Virus record (IMG/VR): IMGVR_UViG_3300027770_000027
Location: 62,001-126,000 of that record
Strand: one strand, 5' to 3'
Length of the DNA stretch: 64,000 bases
Numbering within the stretch: the stretch's first letter is position 1; every line of letters starts with the position of its first letter. The notes beneath the pieces are model-generated. The model did not search any database and was not told where the DNA came from. It worked only from the letters and a program-made list of their open reading frames with translations. Position numbers and translations under genes: made by a program. Of the stretch, positions 30,053 to 43,547 are shown one piece after another.

Positions 30053-30238
30053 TTAAAGAATACAAGATCCGTGACGGCTTATAATATATGTTTTAATTCG
30101 ACACTGATGTAGATCTTCTAACCATTTGATAATATCTTTATCTGGTAATTGTCCAATAATCAAGGGAGGTATTACTTGAAAAGGAAGACTTCTTTTATCA
30201 GACTCCCATTCTATATTTTTAAGATGTGTCCAGTTCAT
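30053..30238 (-). CDS. hypothetical protein
   Basis: ATGA overlap with the phosphoesterase. Confidence 0.65.
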   Translation of the reverse strand: MNWTHLKNIEWESDKRSLPFQVIPPLIIGQLPDKDIIKWLEDLHQCRIKTYIISRHGSCIL

Positions 30239-30978
30239 TGACTATTGTCTATTGATTCAAATGAATCTTTATCAAGATTAAATAAGAGAACTTCTGCTAG
30301 ATGACAATCAACATTAATATTTGTAGAATTAGTTTCCGGATGTGTAGAAGTAATTATTTTTCTAGAAGGAGTATGTCCTACAATCTGAGTGACATTATCA
30401 AAGAATTCTGAATTGTGCCAATCATTCCAAAGTAATCCACCCTTCTTATGTCTTCCACCTCTTATACGATCTGCTGCATACAAACAAGCAATGTCCCAGT
30501 CTCCTGTAGGAGCCTTTAAGGTTCTCTTGGCGTTTTCTATATTATAATTAATAGTATCTACAGTAACTCCCTTAAGAGGATGTTCAAACCAAAGTTTTGT
30601 AATACCCGCATGAGAGAACCAATACTCTTTATCTTTACCTTTAATGGAATGAAAGTATAAGAGTTTTTCCCAATCATCTGGTGTGAGAATTTTATTAATA
30701 ATTTCATGTTTCCAGTAAGCAAAACCGGAACAATACAACTTACCAATAGGTACCATATAATGAATGTCATGGTTACCCATTAAATGAAGACGCTTGGGAT
30801 TGGATAAAGATTCTTTAAGCCAATGTGCCATTGCTTCTACTTCAATAGCATTATCATCAAAGTCATCAAAGTAATCTCCTATAAAAATAGTTTGATCCAC
30901 TTCTGGTTCTCTTTTGAGAGCTTGCTCTACCAGAGCTACTTTTTGATGGACATCTCCAATAATTAAAAATTGATTCAT
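30235..30978 (-). CDS. calcineurin-like metallophosphoesterase
   Basis: GDVH, GDYFD, GNHD, HAG, GHT. Confidence 0.9.
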   Translation of the reverse strand: MNQFLIIGDVHQKVALVEQALKREPEVDQTIFIGDYFDDFDDNAIEVEAMAHWLKESLSNPKRLHLMGNHDIHYMVPIGKLYCSGFAYWKHEIINKILTPDDWEKLLYFHSIKGKDKEYWFSHAGITKLWFEHPLKGVTVDTINYNIENAKRTLKAPTGDWDIACLYAADRIRGGRHKKGGLLWNDWHNSEFFDNVTQIVGHTPSRKIITSTHPETNSTNINVDCHLAEVLLFNLDKDSFESIDNSQ

Positions 30979-31618: not shown

Positions 31619-31798
31619 TTACATTTGTTCTCTGCGCCACCAATTTTCAAAATCAATTTGATCTTGGGATTTTACATCAGTGGGTTTTACATCAGCAAGT
31701 TTTGCTGCGGGAGGTTTAATAGGAGCAACAACTTCAGGAGTTTTGGTGTCGACAACTGGAGGAAGCTCTACTGGAGTTAAATTGTTATCAGCTGGCAT
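31619..31798 (-). CDS. 59-aa Pro-rich protein (MPADNNLTPVELPP...)
   Basis: Not in the track; TAAGTA box upstream. Confidence 0.65.
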   Translation of the reverse strand: MPADNNLTPVELPPVVDTKTPEVVAPIKPPAAKLADVKPTDVKSQDQIDFENWWRREQM

Positions 31799-31822
31799 AT
31801 GATATACTTACCCTAAAAGGGG

Positions 31823-31903
31823 TACGGACGGAGAGACTCGAACTCTCATGCCTTTCGGCGCCAGTTCCTAAGACTGGAGTGTCTGCCATTCCACCACGTC
31901 CGC
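31823..31903 (-). tRNA. trnL: tRNA-Leu(TAG)
   Basis: Cloverleaf, CCAGT-CTTAGGA-ACTGG, long V-arm, no encoded CCA. Confidence 0.95.
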
Positions 31904-31925
31904 TTTTATGTATTTATCCAGAAAA

Positions 31926-32016
31926 TGGTACACCGGGTGGGAATTGAACCCACACCTAGGAGTTATCTACTCAGTACGTGTATAAGACGTCTTGCTCTAC
32001 CGTGAGCTACCGGTGC
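31926..32016 (-). tRNA. tRNA with TAT anticodon (Ile?) and long variable arm
   Basis: ACGT-CTTATAC-ACGT; V-arm GAGT..ACTC; canonical T-arm; ACCA end. Confidence 0.8.
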
Positions 32017-32036
32017 CTGTTGGGTTAAGTATTGTT

Positions 32037-32411
32037 ATGATTAGATTGGTTAAAGCTATCGGAGAAAAATTAAAAGGCAAGCCATTGGCAATGAGATCTC
32101 CTCATTGGGCAACTACTAGACGTCATCACTTAAAAGATCATTCTACATGTGCAGCTTGTGGTGGTACAGAAAAATTACAAGTACACCACAAACAGCCTTA
32201 TCATCTACATCCAGATTTAGAATTGGAACCTACTAATTTGATTACCTTGTGTGAATTTGGAGATATTGATTGTCATTATAATATAGGTCATCATAGAGAC
32301 TGGAAATCTTTTAATCCAAATGTAGTACAAGATGCTGCCGCCAACCTAACAATTATTAACGAAAAGAAAGTGCGCCCGGTTGGGATTGAACCAACGACCA
32401 AGGAATTATGA
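32037..32411 (+). CDS. HNH endonuclease (start revised to MIRLVK)
   Basis: CAACG..L.VHH...NLITLC....CH; TAAGTA box upstream. Confidence 0.9.
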   Translation: MIRLVKAIGEKLKGKPLAMRSPHWATTRRHHLKDHSTCAACGGTEKLQVHHKQPYHLHPDLELEPTNLITLCEFGDIDCHYNIGHHRDWKSFNPNVVQDAAANLTIINEKKVRPVGIEPTTKEL

Positions 32412-32443
32412 GTTCCCTGCTCTGACCACTGAGCTACAGGCGC
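32371..32443 (-). tRNA. tRNA-CAT, probably Ile2 (lysidine type)
   Basis: GGGAA-CTCATAA-TTCCT; body resembles bacterial tRNA-Ile2. Confidence 0.85.
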
Positions 32444-32484
32444 TTATGATAAAATTATAATATATCGTAAGAGGGAAATCAACC

Positions 32485-32668
32485 AGGATGATGTGTTTTT
32501 CTCGCGAGTGTCTGTCACATCGTTCAACGGCCGACCAGCTTGAGCCAATCCATTACCGTCTAAGACCAGTGTTTAAGAAACACCCCTTTCACTAGGGTGT
32601 ACAGCTAGAGGTACTAACTTCAAACTGGACTAACTCTCTCTAGGTTGTCCGGCTAAGCCGGCTCGGAT
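32485..32668 (-). ncRNA. candidate structured RNA of about 185 nt
   Basis: ORF-free and GC-rich; several hairpins with G-U pairs on the minus strand; ATAAATA upstream. Confidence 0.55.
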
Positions 32669-32669
32669 T

Positions 32670-32900
32670 CTATTTATCTAGTTGTTCTACAATATCTTCT
32701 TCTGAAAAAAGACCAGTAGGAGTAAACCCCAAATCTGCTTCAAGTTCTTCAAATCTATAAAGAAATCCTTTAGAGAGATCTTGCTCATCACTATCTTCTT
32801 CAATCTCTCCGGTATACAGACCTTCTCCTCGATATGAGGCGTCTGGCCACTTAGGATCTACATAGTCAATATAATAACGTTTACCGGTTACTGGAATCAT
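32670..32900 (-). CDS. hypothetical acidic protein
   Basis: ORF track. Confidence 0.75.
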   Translation of the reverse strand: MIPVTGKRYYIDYVDPKWPDASYRGEGLYTGEIEEDSDEQDLSKGFLYRFEELEADLGFTPTGLFSEEDIVEQLDK

Positions 32901-32935
32901 ATTTATATATTATAAGAACATTTAAAATATATCAA

Positions 32936-33202
32936 CTATGCTTTGGGTTTTCTTTTAAGAAACTCTGAAACAACTTTGTCTGCTGCTTTGAATTCTGTTG
33001 TATGATTAGCAACTGGCTCGATGTAACGATCCCAAAAGACTTCTGTATCAGGTTCACTACCGAACCTATTCTTGTAATCTACAACAAGAAAGCAACCTTC
33101 CTTTATGTTCACTCTAAACGCCTTCGTTTCTGGACCATCATATACACATTCAGTGCGGACATCCAACAATTGCTTACCTGAAGTTTGAGTTTGCTTTGTC
33201 AT
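32936..33202 (-). CDS. hypothetical protein
   Basis: ORF track. Confidence 0.7.
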   Translation of the reverse strand: MTKQTQTSGKQLLDVRTECVYDGPETKAFRVNIKEGCFLVVDYKNRFGSEPDTEVFWDRYIEPVANHTTEFKAADKVVSEFLKRKPKA

Positions 33203-33226
33203 GTTTAATACTTATAGAAAATAAAT

Positions 33227-33313
33227 CCAACGGCGCTCATGTCTCTGTCTCCCAACCACGGGACACACCAGAGAAATTATACATGGGTCGATGGTATAAT
33301 GAGATTCCGTTGG
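33227..33313 (-). ncRNA. candidate three-way-junction RNA
   Basis: CCAACGG/CCGTTGG and CTCAT/ATGAG closing stem with two inner hairpins. Confidence 0.55.
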
Positions 33314-33432
33314 CCACCAGAAGAGCTCACCGGGTCTTATATGTTACTGGTTAGATAACTTTTGTCCCTTTAAGTGATTTTTTTAAGTGAATCAACACCG
33401 GATCTTGTTTTAAGTGAAAGCCAACACTAAGC

Positions 33433-33532
33433 TTTTCCAGGTTGGATTCGAACCAACGGCGAGCGCTTTGTCCCGGCATTTTGGCCCTTAACCATGAGGG
33501 AGCACTAGATCTACCAACTGAGTTACTGGAAA
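33433..33532 (-). ncRNA. tRNA-like RNA with expanded, anticodon-less arm
   Basis: Perfect acceptor stem and T-arm GTTGG-TTCGAAT-CCAAC; extra hairpin replaces the anticodon loop. Confidence 0.75.
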
Positions 33533-33536
33533 ATTA

Positions 33537-33634
33537 TGGAGACTAGGTTGGTCATTTCATCCAACATCCTGTACTGGTTCCTCAGAGTTTTATACTTAAA
33601 CTACTAGTCATTTGAAATTAAAGTGTCTAGTCTC
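33537..33634 (-). ncRNA. candidate structured RNA ending in CCA
   Basis: GAGACTAG/CTAGTCTC closing stem; motif shared with 34991-35029. Confidence 0.5.
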
Positions 33635-33641
33635 TCCCAGT

Positions 33642-33708
33642 GTCACACAACTACTTTACCAGATTAATCCGGTTACTCACTCCACATTGTGTAGAGGGCA
33701 TGTGTCGC
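33642..33708 (-). ncRNA. candidate small three-way-junction RNA
   Basis: CTCTACA/TGTGGAG and ACCGGA/TCTGGT hairpins within an ACACA/TGTGT stem. Confidence 0.45.
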
Positions 33709-33715
33709 AAAAAAA

Positions 33716-33803
33716 TGGTCGCCTAGGCCGGACTCGAACCGGCACGAGGAGTGCTCCTCGACAGATTTTAAGTCTGTTGTGTCTGCCATTTCACCACTAG
33801 GCG
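33716..33803 (-). tRNA. trnL: tRNA-Leu(TAA)
   Basis: Cloverleaf, long V-arm, CCA. Confidence 0.95.
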
Positions 33804-33806
33804 TGT

Positions 33807-33818
33807 CTATCAAAGATC
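33807..33818 (-). promoter_or_regulatory. boxA-like element GATCTTTGATAG
   Basis: Just downstream of a TTCCC promoter; identical copy at 35052-35063. Confidence 0.6.
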
Positions 33819-33871
33819 ATTTATTATGTTAATATCTTAACATCACTTACTGGGAAGGTCACCTGGGAAAT

Positions 33872-33945
33872 TGGTAGTCCGCCCAGGGCTCGAACCTGGA
33901 ATAAGAGATTCAAAATCTCCTGTGTTACCATTACACCAACGGACT
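33872..33945 (-). tRNA. trnQ: tRNA-Gln(TTG)
   Basis: Cloverleaf, CCA. Confidence 0.95.
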
Positions 33946-33948
33946 ATA

Positions 33949-34024
33949 TGGTCGTGATGGAGAGACTCGAACTCTCGATACCTTGGTCCCAAACCAAGTG
34001 CCATAGCCGCTAGGCGACATCACG
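33949..34024 (-). tRNA. trnP: tRNA-Pro(TGG)
   Basis: Cloverleaf, CCA. Confidence 0.95.
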
Positions 34025-34035
34025 TTATCTAAAAA

Positions 34036-34109
34036 TGGTTGACCATGAAGGTAACGCTCCTTCGTCCTTCGATTATCAGTCGAGAGCTCTACTTTTAAGC
34101 TAATGGTCA
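34036..34109 (-). tRNA. trnI: tRNA-Ile(GAT) with non-canonical D- and T-loops
   Basis: T-loop AGCGTTA, D-loop AAAAGTA; CCA. Confidence 0.85.
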
Positions 34110-34112
34110 ATA

Positions 34113-34187
34113 TGGAGCCAACAGTCGGGATTGAACCGACGACCGGTGGTTTACAAAACCACTGCTCTACCACTGAGCTATGCTGGC
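34113..34187 (-). tRNA. trnT: tRNA-Thr(TGT)
   Basis: Cloverleaf, CCA. Confidence 0.95.
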
Positions 34188-34191
34188 AATG

Positions 34192-34264
34192 TGGAGCCTA
34201 AGGGATTCGAACCCTTCACCTATAGCTTGCAAAGCTACCGCTCTACCGAATGAGCTAAGACCCC
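34192..34264 (-). tRNA. trnA: tRNA-Ala(TGC)
   Basis: G3-U70 pair; no encoded CCA. Confidence 0.95.
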
Positions 34265-34270
34265 TTAAAA

Positions 34271-34344
34271 TGGTGGACCATGAGGGTAACGCTCCCTCTT
34301 GATTCGGTTAAAAGCCGAGTGCTTTACTTTTAAGCTAATGGTCC
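34271..34344 (-). tRNA. trnK: tRNA-Lys(TTT) with non-canonical D- and T-loops
   Basis: Same scaffold as tRNA-Ile(GAT); CCA. Confidence 0.85.
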
Positions 34345-37711: not shown

Positions 37712-37981
37712 ATGAAATTTAATGAACTAGTCAATTTTTTATTAGAAAAATACAGTAAACCATGTACTAAAGTAACCGGGCAACAATCTTCTACTCGAGA
37801 TGATAAAAAATATATGAGATGTGCTAAAGTAGATGGTAAACTTAAAAGAGTTCATTATGGAGACCCTAATATGAGAATTAAGAAGTCTAACCCTAAAAAC
37901 CGCAAAAGTTATAGGGCTAGACATCATTGTAGCTCAGCCAAACCAGGAACTCCCGAATATTTTAGCTGCAAGAACTGGTAA
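37712..37981 (+). CDS. small basic late protein (DUF5754/DUF6321-like) with MKFNELVNFLLE leader
   Basis: V.YGD..M....RKSYRARH.C...SC..W; TAAATA upstream. Confidence 0.8.
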   Translation: MKFNELVNFLLEKYSKPCTKVTGQQSSTRDDKKYMRCAKVDGKLKRVHYGDPNMRIKKSNPKNRKSYRARHHCSSAKPGTPEYFSCKNW

Positions 37982-39074
37982 AGGCTTTCCAATACTTGTG
38001 GGGAGAGATTTCTTTGCCATCTAGTATAGCAAATGCTATGCCACTACAATCGGAAAGATATTGCAAGATCTTTTGAGCCTTTCCCTTTCGATCTAAAGTA
38101 ACAAAATCTGGTTTGGTGAAATATATTTTAATTCTGTTAATTTCAATATTAATTTTATTCATCTTCAAATATAACTCATCCATTAAAGATTCCAGAGTTA
38201 CAACTAACTCCCAATCAAAATTAGCAGCTAACAATGCTTCAAAGTTCTCTCTTTGAGGTTGTCCATACTCTACAAATAAATCAAATAAATGATCTACGGT
38301 CTTTACACCTGTAAAGATTCGATGTAGCTGAAGATAACGAAGAGTCTTAATCTTCTTCAAGATTTGGCCACCACCATATCCAGGAGCATCATCATAAATA
38401 ACCACTCCTTCAATGTCAGCCAGTGGCTCAATGCGCTTTTTAATATCTTCAATACTACCCCCTAAACTAATACCGTAAGACTTGGGTCGTTCAACACCCA
38501 TTTCTTTTGCATAGGTGTCAAGGTTGTGTTGGTTAACATATGAATAATCTGGGTGATAAACCATTCCAATCAACCACAAGGTGGGTTCGGTAGATTCATT
38601 CAATACAATTCTATTAGTTGGTGTAGTCCACTCAAACAGTAAAGTATATAAACCACAATCCAACCATTCCAACCATTCATTATCAAAAACTTTGGGATAC
38701 TTCTTCTTGAGAAATTCAATTTCATGACCATTTTCAAGCTGAGAGGCATCAACTGTGCCTCGGGTGCGAATAATAAGTTCACCCCTGTATCTGCTAACAA
38801 TTAAACAAGACCCATCAATTTTCTGAATTGCTCTAACACCATCTTCTGGATTTAGAGGTTCAAATTCTGGCTTCTCACCATAGTTCATGAACTTCCGGAA
38901 ACCTAGAGACACTGGCATCATATCAGACTTGCGCCATATAGAAGAACGGAAGAACTTATTTTCTTCGGTCCATTCTACACCCATGTTCTTGGGGGTAACC
39001 AGAACACATTCATCCCCTGCAATGACACAATCCTTGAGGTGAAATTGGTCTGAATTGGGAAGTTCTATTTTCAT
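37962..39074 (-). CDS. RNA ligase, T4 Rnl1-like
   Basis: KF.NYGE, KIDGS (motif I), LFEW, EGVVI, KIK. Confidence 0.85.
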   Translation of the reverse strand: MKIELPNSDQFHLKDCVIAGDECVLVTPKNMGVEWTEENKFFRSSIWRKSDMMPVSLGFRKFMNYGEKPEFEPLNPEDGVRAIQKIDGSCLIVSRYRGELIIRTRGTVDASQLENGHEIEFLKKKYPKVFDNEWLEWLDCGLYTLLFEWTTPTNRIVLNESTEPTLWLIGMVYHPDYSYVNQHNLDTYAKEMGVERPKSYGISLGGSIEDIKKRIEPLADIEGVVIYDDAPGYGGGQILKKIKTLRYLQLHRIFTGVKTVDHLFDLFVEYGQPQRENFEALLAANFDWELVVTLESLMDELYLKMNKINIEINRIKIYFTKPDFVTLDRKGKAQKILQYLSDCSGIAFAILDGKEISPHKYWKAFTSSCS

Positions 39075-42509: not shown

Positions 42510-43547
42510 TTAGTCTTTGTAATTTTGATTAATAATTTTTACACTTAACATCTTATTGAGAGTTTCGCTGTATCTCAAATCTCCATTTAAATTATAACCT
42601 CGAATAACAATACCTTCTGCGGGTTTACCATTTTTAACATAAGTCATTTCATTGGCCAGAGTTTGTAATTTTTCTAACGTCAAATTTGGGATTTCGCTTG
42701 CTGTAAAAGATTCTACAAATGGTACAGAAAGACACATATGTGAAAAATCTGATTTCATTACATCTTGAGCTTCTTTATATACTCCAGTTGACAAGTCTTT
42801 TACATTAAAATGAAAGAAAGAAAGCTGCTGAAGGCCAGCTGGATTTCCTTGAATACCTGGTCCACAAATTTCTCCCTGCACTGCGGTGCCTAGTGGTAGA
42901 TAACTTTCAATTTGATATTTCTTAGCCATTTGCCAGTAAACACTGTCTGGTGTCTCCCTTAGCTCTAAGTTACGAGAACATACTTTAAAGTTTCCTTCGT
43001 GATCTTTGATGTAAGTAACAGAAGTCCCATCCATCTTGAGGGTAACACGGACAAACGCAGATGCTTTTAATTCTTCCAATACTTTAATATTAGACAAAAG
43101 GTTGTCTTCATCTGTTCTGCTTATGAATTGAGTAGGAAAATTACCAGCTACTTCCCCTCGTAAATTAGCTGGGATGGGTTTTTCGTATTTGGTAATACCT
43201 AACATCCCTGCAATAGAGGTGTCTTCTTCTGGATCATCTGAATGGTCCCAGATTTCTTGAGCACTAATTAGAGATCTAGGAAAAATAAGTCCTTGAGAAA
43301 CCGTACCTCGAAGCTTAACGGTTTTTACTCGAATAGGTTTGGTAGGATCATTCTTATCCCACAGAAATTCATTCCATACTCTCGGCTGGAGTACGGTATC
43401 AATAGGTACAAAAATTACTCCATCTCCTACCTTATATTCTCCCTTTTTGATAACGCTCTGCCACCCCTGCACTCGAGCAATCTCAATACGGTCTGCTCCT
43501 TCGATAGGAAGGATTTCTGTGATGGTTTCATATGACGCAAGTTCCAT
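42510..43547 (-). CDS. RNA ligase, DRB0094 family with N-terminal OB domain
   Basis: PIEGADRIE, SQGL, KMDGTS, QGE..GPGIQGN, EGIVI, K.IN. Confidence 0.9.
   Translation of the reverse strand: MELASYETITEILPIEGADRIEIARVQGWQSVIKKGEYKVGDGVIFVPIDTVLQPRVWNEFLWDKNDPTKPIRVKTVKLRGTVSQGLIFPRSLISAQEIWDHSDDPEEDTSIAGMLGITKYEKPIPANLRGEVAGNFPTQFISRTDEDNLLSNIKVLEELKASAFVRVTLKMDGTSVTYIKDHEGNFKVCSRNLELRETPDSVYWQMAKKYQIESYLPLGTAVQGEICGPGIQGNPAGLQQLSFFHFNVKDLSTGVYKEAQDVMKSDFSHMCLSVPFVESFTASEIPNLTLEKLQTLANEMTYVKNGKPAEGIVIRGYNLNGDLRYSETLNKMLSVKIINQNYKD

What the first reader, a model, noticed from the sequence alone, without database searches (positions are those of the whole stretch)
31926..32016. UAU-anticodon tRNA with a long variable arm; three Ile-type tRNAs in one cluster
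Seen: loop CTTATAC, an irregular top of the anticodon stem and a class-II-like V-arm. CAT (Ile2-like) and GAT tRNAs are also present. Known: bacteria normally read AUA with lysidine-modified CAU, and long V-arms are Leu/Ser/Tyr identity features. Inference: TilS-independent AUA decoding for ATA-rich late genes, or mischarging.
Basis: partly seen in the sequence, partly recalled or inferred. Interest (0 to 1): 0.6.

Follow-up and report, generated by a model that had tools for sequence, protein, structure and literature searches.

The report
Phage AUA tRNA with second anticodon-like arm
The flagged gene is a real phage tRNA that reads the isoleucine codon AUA, and its "long variable arm" is a second anticodon-like hairpin displaying GAU. 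This design recurs in hundreds of phages and in a bacterial clade that has lost the usual AUA-decoding enzyme TilS.

Summary
**Observation: confirmed.** Window 31926-32016 (minus strand) encodes a 91-nt tRNA with:
- anticodon loop CUUAUAC (anticodon UAU)
- a mismatched top of the anticodon stem
- an extra hairpin before the T arm.

**The extra hairpin is not a class II variable arm.** It has a 7-nt loop, UAGAUAA, followed by a 6-nt spacer.

**It belongs to a large family.**
- In an unbiased scan of viral contigs, 62 of 68 unique long tRNA(UAU) genes carry a hairpin loop NNGAUNN. Only 3 of 238 Leu/Ser/Tyr tRNAs do.
- The reverse scan, starting from the loop, finds UAU upstream in 109 of 120 matches.
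- All helices covary.
- Cultured Vibrio, Acinetobacter, Lactobacillus and Sinorhizobium phages carry it, annotated simply as tRNA-Ile.

**A bacterial clade uses it in place of TilS.**
- Five of 121 sampled genomes related to Actinomyces timonensis carry it.
- Those five lack TilS and the third CAU tRNA.
- Their rare ATA codons align mostly with Ile in orthologues.

**Conclusion.** This is a functional, TilS-independent AUA decoder. The phage genome is ATA-rich (33% of Ile codons).

**Inference, untested.** The GAU loop gives IleRS the anticodon it needs, because E. coli IleRS charges UAU about 360-fold worse than its normal substrate. Mischarging is not supported. I found no description of this arm in the literature searched.

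The parts
31926..32016 (-). Whole tRNA(UAU) gene: 91 nt, 7/5 acceptor/T configuration, CCA encoded
   Evidence: ARAGORN; Rfam RF00005, 47.3 bits.
32010..32016 (-). Acceptor stem, 5' strand GCACCGG. It pairs with 31930-31936, and the first pair is G1.U72.
   Evidence: Read from the sequence. G1.U72 is the commonest first pair in the family, 31 of 54.
31994..32007 (-). D arm GCUC / ACGGUA / GAGC: class I type, 4-bp stem
   Evidence: U12-A23 is found in 40 of 54 relatives.
31975..31991 (-). Decoding anticodon arm. Stem GACGU/ACGUA with a G.A mismatch at the top; loop CUUAUAC at 31980-31986; anticodon UAU at 31982-31984.
   Evidence: The same 16-mer arm occurs in ordinary 74-76-nt phage tRNA(UAU) genes.
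31960..31972 (-). Second, anticodon-arm-like hairpin. Stem GAG/CUC; 7-nt loop UAGAUAA at 31963-31969; GAU at 31965-31967.
   Evidence: Family motif NNGAUNN in 62 of 68 relatives against 3 of 238 controls. All four stem pairs covary. The motif is coupled to UAU in 109 of 120 reverse-scan matches.
31954..31959 (-). 3' spacer CUAGGU, the counterpart of the class I variable loop (nt 44-48)
   Evidence: The spacer is 5 nt in 81 and 6 nt in 33 of 127 relatives. Its last base covaries with base 15: A-U 42, G-C 5 of 54.
31937..31953 (-). T arm GUGGG / UUCAAUU / CCCAC
31926..31929 (-). Discriminator A73 plus encoded CCA
   Evidence: A73 is found in 53 of 54 relatives.
32370..32443 (-). Neighbouring tRNA(CAU) of Ile2 type, the TilS-dependent AUA decoder
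   Evidence: ARAGORN and Rfam, 69.9 bits. 87-88% identical to E. coli genes annotated tRNA-Ile.
34039..34109 (-). tRNA-Ile(GAU) of the same cluster, with loop CUGAUAA
   Evidence: Rfam, 50.2 bits. Not called by ARAGORN.
31821..31903 (-). tRNA-Leu(UAG), 22 nt downstream on the same strand

Best explanation
**What it is.** This is a working phage tRNA that decodes AUA with a genomically encoded UAU anticodon, so it does not need lysidine formation by TilS.

**Its family.** It belongs to a widespread family that I could not find described. In this family a class I tRNA body carries two anticodon-arm-sized hairpins in tandem between position 26 and the variable loop.
- The first hairpin has a proper anticodon loop: C/U32, U33, UAU, A37.
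- The second has a 7-nt loop Y-A-G-A-U-N-A that displays GAU, the anticodon of the major tRNA-Ile. It lacks U33 and usually lacks a purine at position 37, so it is not built for decoding.

**Proposed mechanism.** The second loop gives isoleucyl-tRNA synthetase the G34-A35-U36 triplet it requires, because a UAU anticodon is a very poor IleRS substrate. The first loop then reads AUA on the ribosome. The phage thereby supplies AUA-decoding capacity for its ATA-rich genes regardless of host TilS or tRNA-Ile2 levels.

**Shown here:**
- the gene and its structure
- the family, its covariation and the motif
- the coupling of the motif to UAU
- replacement of TilS plus tRNA-Ile2 by this design in a bacterial clade
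- Ile-like usage of ATA in that clade.

**Inferred:**
- that IleRS reads the second loop
- that the window's copy is expressed, processed and charged.

**Confidence split.** About 0.85 that this is a functional TilS-independent tRNA-Ile for AUA. About 0.45 that the second arm works specifically as an IleRS handle.
For: **Gene and fold.**

**Family.**
ARAGORN called 76 tRNA(UAU) genes of 77-95 nt in them, all but one of 80 nt or more.
- 62 of 68 unique sequences have a hairpin loop NNGAUNN, against 3 of 238 Leu/Ser/Tyr tRNAs from the same loci.
- Loop composition over those 62: Y32' in 62, A33' in 57, A38' in 49. The pair equivalent to 29-41 is C-G in 52.
- The reverse scan from CAGAUUA plus the T loop found UAU upstream in 109 of 120 matches and no other recurrent anticodon.
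- Other sporadic long-arm phage tRNAs show no such mimic.

**Structure.**
- 94.5% of cells are paired. Covariation is 0.85 against 0.21 in shuffles, and slid controls reach only 36-50% paired. All four pairs of the second hairpin show double changes.
- Dimensions of the second hairpin: 7-nt loop in 99 of 127, 4-5 bp stem in 107 of 127, 5-6 nt 3' spacer in 114 of 127.
- The last spacer base covaries with base 15 like the 15-48 pair.

**Ile identity elements outside the anticodon.** A73 in 53 of 54, U12-A23 in 40 of 54, C4-G69 in 35 of 54. The published identity set is in PMC9976931.

**Why a handle would be needed.** E. coli IleRS has a 360-fold lower kcat/Km for UAU than for LAU, the lysidine-modified anticodon (PMC3575796).

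**Cellular use.**
- 5 of 5 carrier genomes lack TilS, against 1 of 116 non-carriers.
- Carriers have 2 CAU tRNAs; TilS-positive relatives have 3.
- The two-hairpin gene is their only UAU tRNA. It sits beside tRNA-Leu(UAA) in all five, with diverged flanks.
- ATA sites align with Ile at 14, Leu at 6 and Val at 6 of 36 sites. CTA sites align with Leu at 83% and ATT sites with Ile at 64%.

**Demand in the phage.** ATA is 23.3 per 1000 codons and 33% of Ile codons. The phage has no TilS.

**Selection.**
- Small phages with only one or two tRNAs carry this one: Vibrio phage henriette 12B8 and Acinetobacter phage qsb1.
- A strain variant in another lake metagenome has SNPs at 31749, 31790 and 32048 but none inside the tRNA.
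Against: **No direct evidence for the window's tRNA.**
- The metatranscriptome run holds the cluster only as an assembled contig. That cannot show transcription, processed ends or charging.
- The window's copy has a G.A mismatch at the top of the anticodon stem, with A.C above it.
- Its second hairpin is only 3-4 bp and has G-C where most relatives have C-G.

**Against the IleRS-handle step.**
- Position 37' is U in 40 of 62 loops, so the loop cannot carry t6A37. That modification is a strong determinant for bacterial-type IleRS.
- A33' replaces U33.
- Class I synthetases are known, from established structures, to approach the face of the tRNA away from the variable loop. How the second loop would reach the anticodon-binding domain is therefore unclear.
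- Ordinary class I tRNA(UAU) genes without the extra arm also exist in phages.
- The carrier Actinomyces have the type 2 IleRS, as do their TilS-positive relatives. This type has been suggested elsewhere to tolerate UAU.

**ATA sites.** They are less Ile-dominated (39%) than ATT sites (64%).
Confidence: 0.55

Rival explanations
1. The tRNA is an isoleucine AUA decoder, but the second hairpin serves something other than IleRS recognition. Options: a recognition or anti-recognition element for a U34 or A37 modification enzyme; a decoy or shield against host anticodon nucleases; a folding or stability element; or a processing signal.
For: - The loop departs from a true tRNA-Ile anticodon loop at positions 33' (A in 57 of 62) and 37' (U in 40 of 62).
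- The window's phage carries an Rnl1-like ligase, a second RNA ligase and a metallophosphoesterase near the cluster. This suggests pressure from tRNA-cleaving defences.
- Class I tRNA(UAU) genes without the arm exist in phages.
- In the window's copy the second loop contains AUA, which could pair with the UAU anticodon.
Against: - The invariant part of the loop is exactly G-A-U, and the motif occurs only with UAU anticodons.
- A codon mimic would need AUA, but position 37' is A in only 13 of 62 loops.
- The design occurs in very different phages and in free-living bacteria. Its reader is therefore probably a universal host factor and not a phage-specific protein or a particular defence system.
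Confidence: 0.28
2. Mischarging or recoding. The extra arm makes the tRNA a substrate for LeuRS, SerRS or TyrRS, so AUA is read as a non-isoleucine residue. This would parallel the nematode nev-tRNA-Ile(UAU), which LeuRS charges in vitro.
For: - Precedents exist: nev-tRNA(UAU) charged with Leu (PMC3333845), and allo-tRNAs, in which UAU is a predominant anticodon and Ser or Ala is inserted (PMC5389517).
- A73 is also the tRNA-Leu discriminator.
- Bacterial LeuRS does not read the anticodon (established knowledge).
- 6 of 36 ATA sites align with Leu.
Against: - The D arm and core are of class I type.
- The extra hairpin sits before a 5-6 nt variable-loop-like spacer and has a 7-nt loop, unlike class II arms.
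- A73 argues against Ser.
- Anticodon base A35 argues against Tyr.
- The configuration is 7/5, not the 8/4 or 9/3 of allo-tRNAs.
- The conserved GAU has no role in Leu, Ser or Tyr identity.
- In TilS-less carriers ATA sites align with Ile more than twice as often as with Leu. True Leu codons give 80-83% Leu.
Confidence: 0.05
3. The window's copy is a decaying or inactive member of the family, a pseudogene, even though the family as a whole is functional.
For: - The top of the anticodon stem has a G.A mismatch, with A.C above it.
- The second hairpin is short (3-4 bp).
- The D loop is short and has C at position 15.
- The fold z-score is only -1.85.
- The phage also has an Ile2-type CAU tRNA, which could cover AUA.
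Against: - Acceptor, D, T and both hairpins are intact, and CCA is encoded.
- The nearest relative, L080, has the same extra A after the D stem, the same A.C, a G.U where the window has G.A, and the same CUAGGU spacer. These are subgroup traits and not decay.
- The tRNA is identical in an independent viral contig and in a second lake metagenome whose flanks carry SNPs.
Confidence: 0.05
4. The roles are reversed. The GAU hairpin is the decoding arm, reading AUU and AUC, and the UAU hairpin is the accessory arm.
For: - The second hairpin is followed by a canonical-looking variable loop and T arm.
- In the Actinomyces copies its loop is a perfect CUGAUAA.
Against: - In phages position 33' is A in 57 of 62 loops and position 37' is a pyrimidine in 45 of 62. 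Both are incompatible with a normal decoding loop.
- The first hairpin always has U33 and A or G at 37.
- Carriers are exactly the genomes that need a new AUA decoder, not another AUY decoder.
Confidence: 0.03

Closest known systems
tRNA-Ile2(UAU) of Mycoplasma mobile and other TilS-less bacteria (PMC3575796)
   Same: A genomically encoded UAU anticodon reads AUA without lysidine. It occurs where TilS and tRNA-Ile(CAU) are missing, or alongside them.
   Different: The known examples are described as ordinary tRNAs whose IleRS has adapted: Arg865 in M. mobile, or a eukaryote-type enzyme elsewhere. Here the tRNA carries an additional GAU-bearing hairpin, and nothing suggests an adapted synthetase in the many different phage hosts.
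Class II tRNAs (Leu, Ser, Tyr) with long variable arms
   Same: There is an extra stem-loop between the anticodon arm and the T arm, and the total length is about 85-95 nt.
   Different: - Class II arms have 3-5-nt loops, sit after nt 44-45, and leave only 1-2 nt before the T stem.
- Here the loop is 7 nt, the stem 4-5 bp, and the 3' spacer 5-6 nt behaving like the whole class I variable loop.
- The D arm is of class I type, and the loop sequence is conserved (GAU).
Nematode nev-tRNA-Ile(UAU) (PMC3333845, PMC4300185)
   Same: A UAU anticodon combined with an extra arm.
   Different: nev-tRNAs are eukaryotic, derive from tRNA-Leu, and are charged by LeuRS in vitro. This family has a tRNA-Ile-like body, A73 and a GAU loop, and ATA behaves as Ile in carrier bacteria.
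Bacterial allo-tRNAs (PMC5389517)
   Same: Non-canonical long-arm tRNAs from metagenomes and phages, with UAU among the commonest anticodons.
   Different: Allo-tRNAs have 8/4 or 9/3 acceptor/T branches, a long D stem with a tetraloop, G73 or U73, and Ser/Ala identity. This tRNA is 7/5 with A73 and an ordinary D arm.
Anticodon mimics placed off the canonical arm in viral tRNA-like structures, such as the BMV TLS-Tyr (10.1101/2020.09.18.302638, PMC10870377)
   Same: Precedent for a synthetase identity element presented by a helix other than the canonical anticodon arm.
   Different: Those are 3' ends of plant RNA virus genomes and do not decode. Here the molecule is a translating tRNA that would keep decoding and identity on separate arms.

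Membership tests
Canonical tRNA (Rfam RF00005) | Cloverleaf with a 7-bp acceptor stem, D arm, anticodon arm with 7-nt loop, and T arm with a GTTCRANYC-type loop | tested here: met
   47.3 bits against a cut-off of 29, model positions 1-71 matched with an 18-nt insertion. ARAGORN cloverleaf.
TilS-independent tRNA-Ile(UAU) AUA decoders | UAU anticodon in a loop with U33 and A37 | tested here: met
   Loop CUUAUAC; anticodon at 31982-31984.
TilS-independent tRNA-Ile(UAU) AUA decoders | Isoleucine identity outside the anticodon (A73; minor C4-G69, U12-A23) | tested here: met
   The window has A73, C4-G69 and U12-A23. In the family: A73 53 of 54, U12-A23 40 of 54, C4-G69 35 of 54. The identity set is from PMC9976931.
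TilS-independent tRNA-Ile(UAU) AUA decoders | Can stand in for TilS plus tRNA-Ile(CAU) | tested here: met
   Tested for the family, not for the window's unknown host. Five carrier genomes lack TilS and the third CAU tRNA, and this is their only UAU tRNA.
TilS-independent tRNA-Ile(UAU) AUA decoders | Charged with isoleucine and reads AUA on the ribosome | not testable with these tools
   Indirect only: ATA sites in carriers align with Ile at 14, Leu at 6 and Val at 6 of 36 sites.
Class II tRNA (Leu/Ser/Tyr type) | Variable arm inserted after nt 44-45 with a short (3-5 nt) loop and at most about 2 nt before the T stem | tested here: not met
   In the window the loop is 7 nt, the 5' spacer 1-2 nt and the 3' spacer 6 nt. 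In the family: loop of 7 nt in 99 of 127, 3' spacer of 5-6 nt in 114 of 127.
Class II tRNA (Leu/Ser/Tyr type) | Leu, Ser or Tyr anticodon with the matching discriminator (G73 for Ser) | tested here: not met
   Anticodon UAU and A73.
allo-tRNA | 8/4 or 9/3 acceptor/T-stem configuration, long D stem with a tetraloop | tested here: not met
   7-bp acceptor, 5-bp T stem, 4-bp D stem with a 6-nt loop. Defining features from PMC5389517.
Two-hairpin tRNA(UAU) family, defined here | Second hairpin with a 7-nt loop NNGAUNN between the UAU arm and a 5-6-nt spacer, plus A73 | tested here: met
   The window has loop UAGAUAA, spacer CUAGGU and A73.

The most novel reading that the evidence does not exclude
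Identity and decoding are physically split in a natural tRNA. A duplicated anticodon arm frozen as a non-decoding GAU display is what IleRS recognises, while a separate UAU arm reads AUA. This would let phages, and at least one bacterial clade, bypass lysidine/TilS without any change in the synthetase.
Probability: 0.45. Interest if true: 0.92.

Novelty: new variant of a known kind. Interest (0 to 1): 0.8.

Why it matters
**The AUA problem.** AUA is the one sense codon that nearly all bacteria can read only after an essential enzyme, TilS, rewrites a CAU anticodon. The known exceptions rely on altered synthetases or ribosomes.

**What is new here.**
- A portable tRNA design that solves the problem by itself would explain how phages with AT-rich genomes translate ATA in many unrelated hosts.
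- It would explain how a bacterial lineage could lose TilS.
- It would be a natural example of separating a tRNA's synthetase identity from its codon specificity. Synthetic biologists try to engineer exactly this for codon reassignment.

**Practical points.**
- These genes are currently annotated as plain tRNA-Ile, or missed altogether, in phage genomes.
- TilS is discussed as an antibacterial target, so a mobile bypass is relevant to that idea.

Tried and rejected
**Searches that gave nothing useful.**
- Near and distant BLAST of the window's tRNA against cultured phages and E. coli genomes found nothing useful. Family members from other loci were needed to reach cultured phages.
- The exact-16-mer hit L010/L011 is the same phage, 100% identical over 4.9 kb, so it is uninformative.
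- Protein-level relatives of the neighbouring ATPase (69-70% identity) hold no tRNA cluster in the DNA available.
- ARAGORN in intron mode gives the same model, so there is no intron reading.

**Readings considered and rejected.**
- Loop-loop pairing, with the second loop as an AUA codon mimic. It fits the window's copy but only 13 of 62 relatives.
- An RNase E-like AGAUU site. Rejected because position 37' varies.

**Tests that were uninformative or inconclusive.**
- IleRS comparison. Carriers and TilS-positive relatives both have the type 2 enzyme at about 65% identity, with the C-terminal DERK motif kept.
- First ATA-meaning test on 80 kb per genome: 19 sites, inconclusive. It was enlarged to about 400 kb per genome.
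- The IleRS genes themselves contain no ATA codon.
- Laid sequencing runs are contigs only. They show presence in a lake metatranscriptome library but not transcription, processing or ends.

- The large protein searches, structure prediction and complex prediction were not used. Nothing in the question rested on a protein.
- No alternative genetic code was invoked.
- Read laying was given 3601 letters, under the 6000 limit.

Full report
**1. The observation**

The window is bases 62001-126000 of a 227,352-bp viral record that is rated complete.

- ARAGORN finds 11 tRNA genes in the window, all on the minus strand. One is tRNA-Ile(tat) at 31926-32016.
- Rfam's tRNA model matches 31929-32016 at 47.3 bits against a cut-off of 29. 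The alignment shows one extra base after position 26, a non-standard pair at the top of the anticodon stem, and an 18-nt insertion before the T arm.

Read 5' to 3', the RNA has these parts:

| Part | Sequence |
|---|---|
| Acceptor stem | GCACCGG, with G1.U72 |
| Positions 8-9 | UA |
| D arm | GCUC / ACGGUA / GAGC |
| Linker | AA |
| Anticodon stem | GACGU/ACGUA, with G.A at the top |
| Anticodon loop | CUUAUAC |
| Linker | CU |
| Second hairpin | GAG / UAGAUAA / CUC |
| 3' spacer | CUAGGU |
| T arm | GUGGG / UUCAAUU / CCCAC |
| 3' end | A73, CCA |

- The CAU gene at 32370-32443 matches E. coli genes annotated tRNA-Ile at 87-88% identity.
- A GAU tRNA at 34039-34109 is found by Rfam at 50.2 bits. 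ARAGORN misses it.

**2. It is one of a large family**

*Starting point.*
- A 16-mer from the anticodon arm found ordinary 74-76-nt phage tRNA(UAU) genes with the same arm, plus a second copy of this same phage.

*Forward scan.*
- I then scanned the viral contigs with a pattern that fixes only the UAU loop and the T loop and demands 20-32 nt between them.
- ARAGORN called 76 tRNA(UAU) genes of 77-95 nt in them, all but one of 80 nt or more.
- The pattern says nothing about the inserted region. Even so, 62 of the 68 unique sequences have there a hairpin of at least 3 bp with a 7-nt loop NNGAUNN.
- Only 3 of 238 Leu/Ser/Tyr tRNAs from the same loci do.

*Loop composition in those 62.*

| Loop position | Bases |
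|---|---|
| 32' | C 44, U 18 |
| 33' | A 57 |
| 34'-36' | G-A-U (fixed by the test) |
| 37' | U 40, A 13, C 5, G 4 |
| 38' | A 49 |

*Reverse scan.*
- This scan was keyed on CAGAUUA plus the T loop.
- It found a UAU loop just upstream in 109 of 120 matches.
- The remainder are chance matches inside unrelated tRNAs.
- The GAU loop and the UAU anticodon are therefore coupled in both directions.
- Other occasional long-arm phage tRNAs (Asn, Thr, Met, Trp and others) show no such mimic.

**3. Architecture**

Across 127 unique members:
- the second hairpin has a 7-nt loop in 99
- it has a 4-5 bp stem in 107
- it is followed by 5 nt in 81 and by 6 nt in 33
- it is preceded by 0-5 nt in most members, 2 nt being the commonest.

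These are the dimensions of an anticodon arm followed by a class I variable loop, not of a class II variable arm.

In a 54-sequence non-redundant alignment:
- 94.5% of cells are paired across the five helices.
- The covariation score is 0.85 against 0.21 in shuffles. Sliding the partners drops pairing to 36-50%.
- All four pairs of the second hairpin show double substitutions.
- The last base of the 3' spacer covaries with D-loop base 15 (A-U 42, G-C 5 of 54), as the 15-48 tertiary pair does.
- A73 is present in 53 of 54. G1.U72 is the commonest first pair, in 31 of 54.

The window's nearest relative, L080, shares its extra A after the D stem, the A.C, and the CUAGGU spacer. It has G.U where the window has G.A. 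The 'irregular' features are therefore traits of a subgroup.

**4. Where it occurs**

*Cultured phages with the same design.*
- Vibrio phage henriette 12B8, Vibrio phages Hades and V6Aob
- Aeromonas phage 1233
- Acinetobacter phage vB_AbaS_qsb1
- Sinorhizobium phage Phosso
- Lactobacillus phages Semele, LpeD, Lpa804 and 3-521, and Levilactobacillus phage ENFP1

It is annotated as tRNA-Ile or not annotated at all. The only tRNA in the ~3-kb stretch examined of henriette is this one. In the stretch examined of the 55-kb Acinetobacter phage the only tRNAs are this one and a tRNA-Arg.

*Bacterial genomes.*
- A scan of one genome per species returned 21 long tRNA(UAU) genes, 11 of them with the GAU loop.
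- Several of those lie on MAG contigs with 12-29 tRNAs, which look like phage DNA.
- Three are chromosomal in Actinomyces genomes.

**5. A natural experiment**

*TilS.*
- The three Actinomyces genomes gave no TilS match.
- With a covariance model of the family, I searched a sample of 121 genomes of that taxonomic family.
- Exactly five have the two-hairpin tRNA, at 78-81 bits. The best ordinary tRNAs score at most 62.
- In the same 121 genomes TilS is found in 115. It is missing in those five and in one other genome.
- If the genomes were independent this association would have p of about 3e-8. They are not independent: the carriers share about 78% IleRS identity, so this may be a single event.

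*tRNA complement.*
- The carriers have two CAU tRNAs, an initiator and an elongator Met. Five TilS-positive relatives have three.
- The two-hairpin gene is the carriers' only UAU tRNA.
- It lies next to tRNA-Leu(UAA) in all five, and the flanks have diverged.
- An order-wide sample of 151 genomes found it nowhere else.
- In these copies the second loop is a perfect CUGAUAA, followed by AAGGUC or AUGGUC.

*Meaning of ATA in the carriers.*
I fetched about 400 kb from each of four carriers, plus about 57 kb from the fifth. I selected frames by GC3 and paired reciprocal best orthologues. For each rare-codon site I then asked which residue the other carriers have there.

| Codon | Informative sites | Majority residue in orthologues |
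|---|---|---|
| ATA | 36 | Ile 14, Leu 6, Val 6, Met 3 |
| ATT | 236 | Ile 64% |
| CTA | 90 | Leu 83% |
| GTA | 129 | Val 64% |

ATA therefore behaves as a noisy Ile codon and clearly not as a Leu codon. The commonest partner codon is ATC, in 28 of 68 pairs.

**6. Why a second GAU loop?**

*What is published.*
- Isoleucine identity in E. coli rests on the anticodon and A73, with minor contributions from C4-G69, U12-A23 (printed as U12-G23 in the review) and C29-G41. t6A37 also contributes (PMC9976931).
- E. coli IleRS charges a UAU-anticodon tRNA 360-fold less efficiently than the lysidine form. Trp905 stacks on base 34. M. mobile needed an Arg at that site (PMC3575796).

*What follows from that.*
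- A phage tRNA with UAU would be poorly charged in ordinary hosts.
- The second loop conserves exactly G34', A35' and U36'. It also usually has A38', and C-G at the pair equivalent to 29-41 (52 of 62).
- It has lost the features needed for decoding, namely U33 and a purine at 37.
- The decoding arm does not conserve C29-G41.

*The inference, and its limits.*
- This pattern is what one expects if the second arm is kept for IleRS and the first for the ribosome.
- It remains an inference. U37' excludes t6A in most members, and the geometry is unknown.
- Class I UAU tRNAs without the arm also exist.

**7. Context in this phage**

- ATA makes up 33% of Ile codons, at 23.3 per 1000. The share is 37-43% at genome 100-160 kb and 17% around the tRNA region.
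- No TilS is encoded.
- The other phage tRNAs mostly have U34 and read A-ending codons.
- A lake-water metatranscriptome library contains a 2431-nt contig identical to window 31817-34247. A second lake metagenome holds a variant with SNPs in the flanks but none in the tRNA. Neither shows processing or charging.

**8. Literature**

- Seven full-text searches and the papers I read turned up nev-tRNAs, allo-tRNAs, the M. mobile system and TLS anticodon mimics.
- None describes a GAU-bearing extra arm on tRNA(UAU), or TilS loss in Actinomyces.
- The library does not cover everything, so prior description cannot be excluded.

**9. Verdict**

- 'TilS-independent AUA decoding' is well supported by comparison.
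- 'Class II arm / mischarging' is not supported.
- The extra arm is best described as a second, non-decoding anticodon arm displaying GAU.
- Its proposed role as an IleRS handle is a specific hypothesis that can be tested at the bench.

Noticed in passing
window 34039-34109 (-) and 34271-34344 (-): tRNA-Ile(GAU) and tRNA-Lys(UUU) are paralogues. They share an unusual D loop, AAAAGUA (no G18G19), and an unusual T loop, AGCGUUA (no UUC). This looks like a co-varied elbow. ARAGORN misses the Ile one.
   Followed up: partly
window 33433-33532 (-); also G001:C1:14550-14649: A 100-nt tRNA-like element. It has a good acceptor stem and T arm, a degenerate D stem and a 35-nt insert in the anticodon branch. 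It scores 28.6 bits, just under the cut-off. A similar 100-nt hit at 30.4 bits occurs in a related phage fragment. The fold energy is not exceptional.
   Followed up: partly
window 32037-32411 (+): An HNH endonuclease ORF lies antisense between the UAU and CAU tRNA genes and overlaps the CAU gene by about 40 nt. HNH genes also lie within about 0.5 kb of the UAU tRNA in Acinetobacter phage qsb1 and Sinorhizobium phage Phosso.
   Followed up: no
window 37962-39074 (-), 42510-43547 (-), 30235-30978 (-): An Rnl1-type RNA ligase, a second RNA ligase with an OB-fold domain, and a calcineurin-like phosphoesterase sit near the tRNA cluster. This is a possible tRNA-repair kit against anticodon nucleases.
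   Followed up: partly
genome G000:C1:39411-39835 (outside the window): ARAGORN calls a tmRNA-like gene with a 33-residue tag in this phage genome.
   Followed up: no
window 32454-32482 (-): A promoter-like site, TTGATT-17-TATAAT, lies just upstream of the CAU tRNA. It could drive the CAU-UAU-Leu(UAG) group. Overall the count of promoter-like sites is not above chance.
   Followed up: no
L342-L346 (Actinomyces-clade genomes G087, G112, G059, G022, G005): A small Actinomyces clade, which includes A. timonensis DSM 23838, lacks TilS and the Ile2-type CAU tRNA. In the regions sampled it uses ATA at only 0.02-0.09% of codons. One further sampled genome (G103) lacks TilS and also lacks the two-hairpin tRNA.
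   Followed up: partly
L366-L368 (IleRS genes of carrier genomes): The IleRS of carriers and relatives is the type 2 (eukaryote-like) enzyme. The C-terminal QDERK motif reads MDERK in two of the three carriers examined.
   Followed up: partly
L070 (IMGVR_UViG_3300017388_000001): ARAGORN reports a 97-nt tRNA with a 4-base anticodon call (taac) and a long insert, in a 436-kb viral contig that also carries a two-hairpin tRNA(UAU).
   Followed up: no
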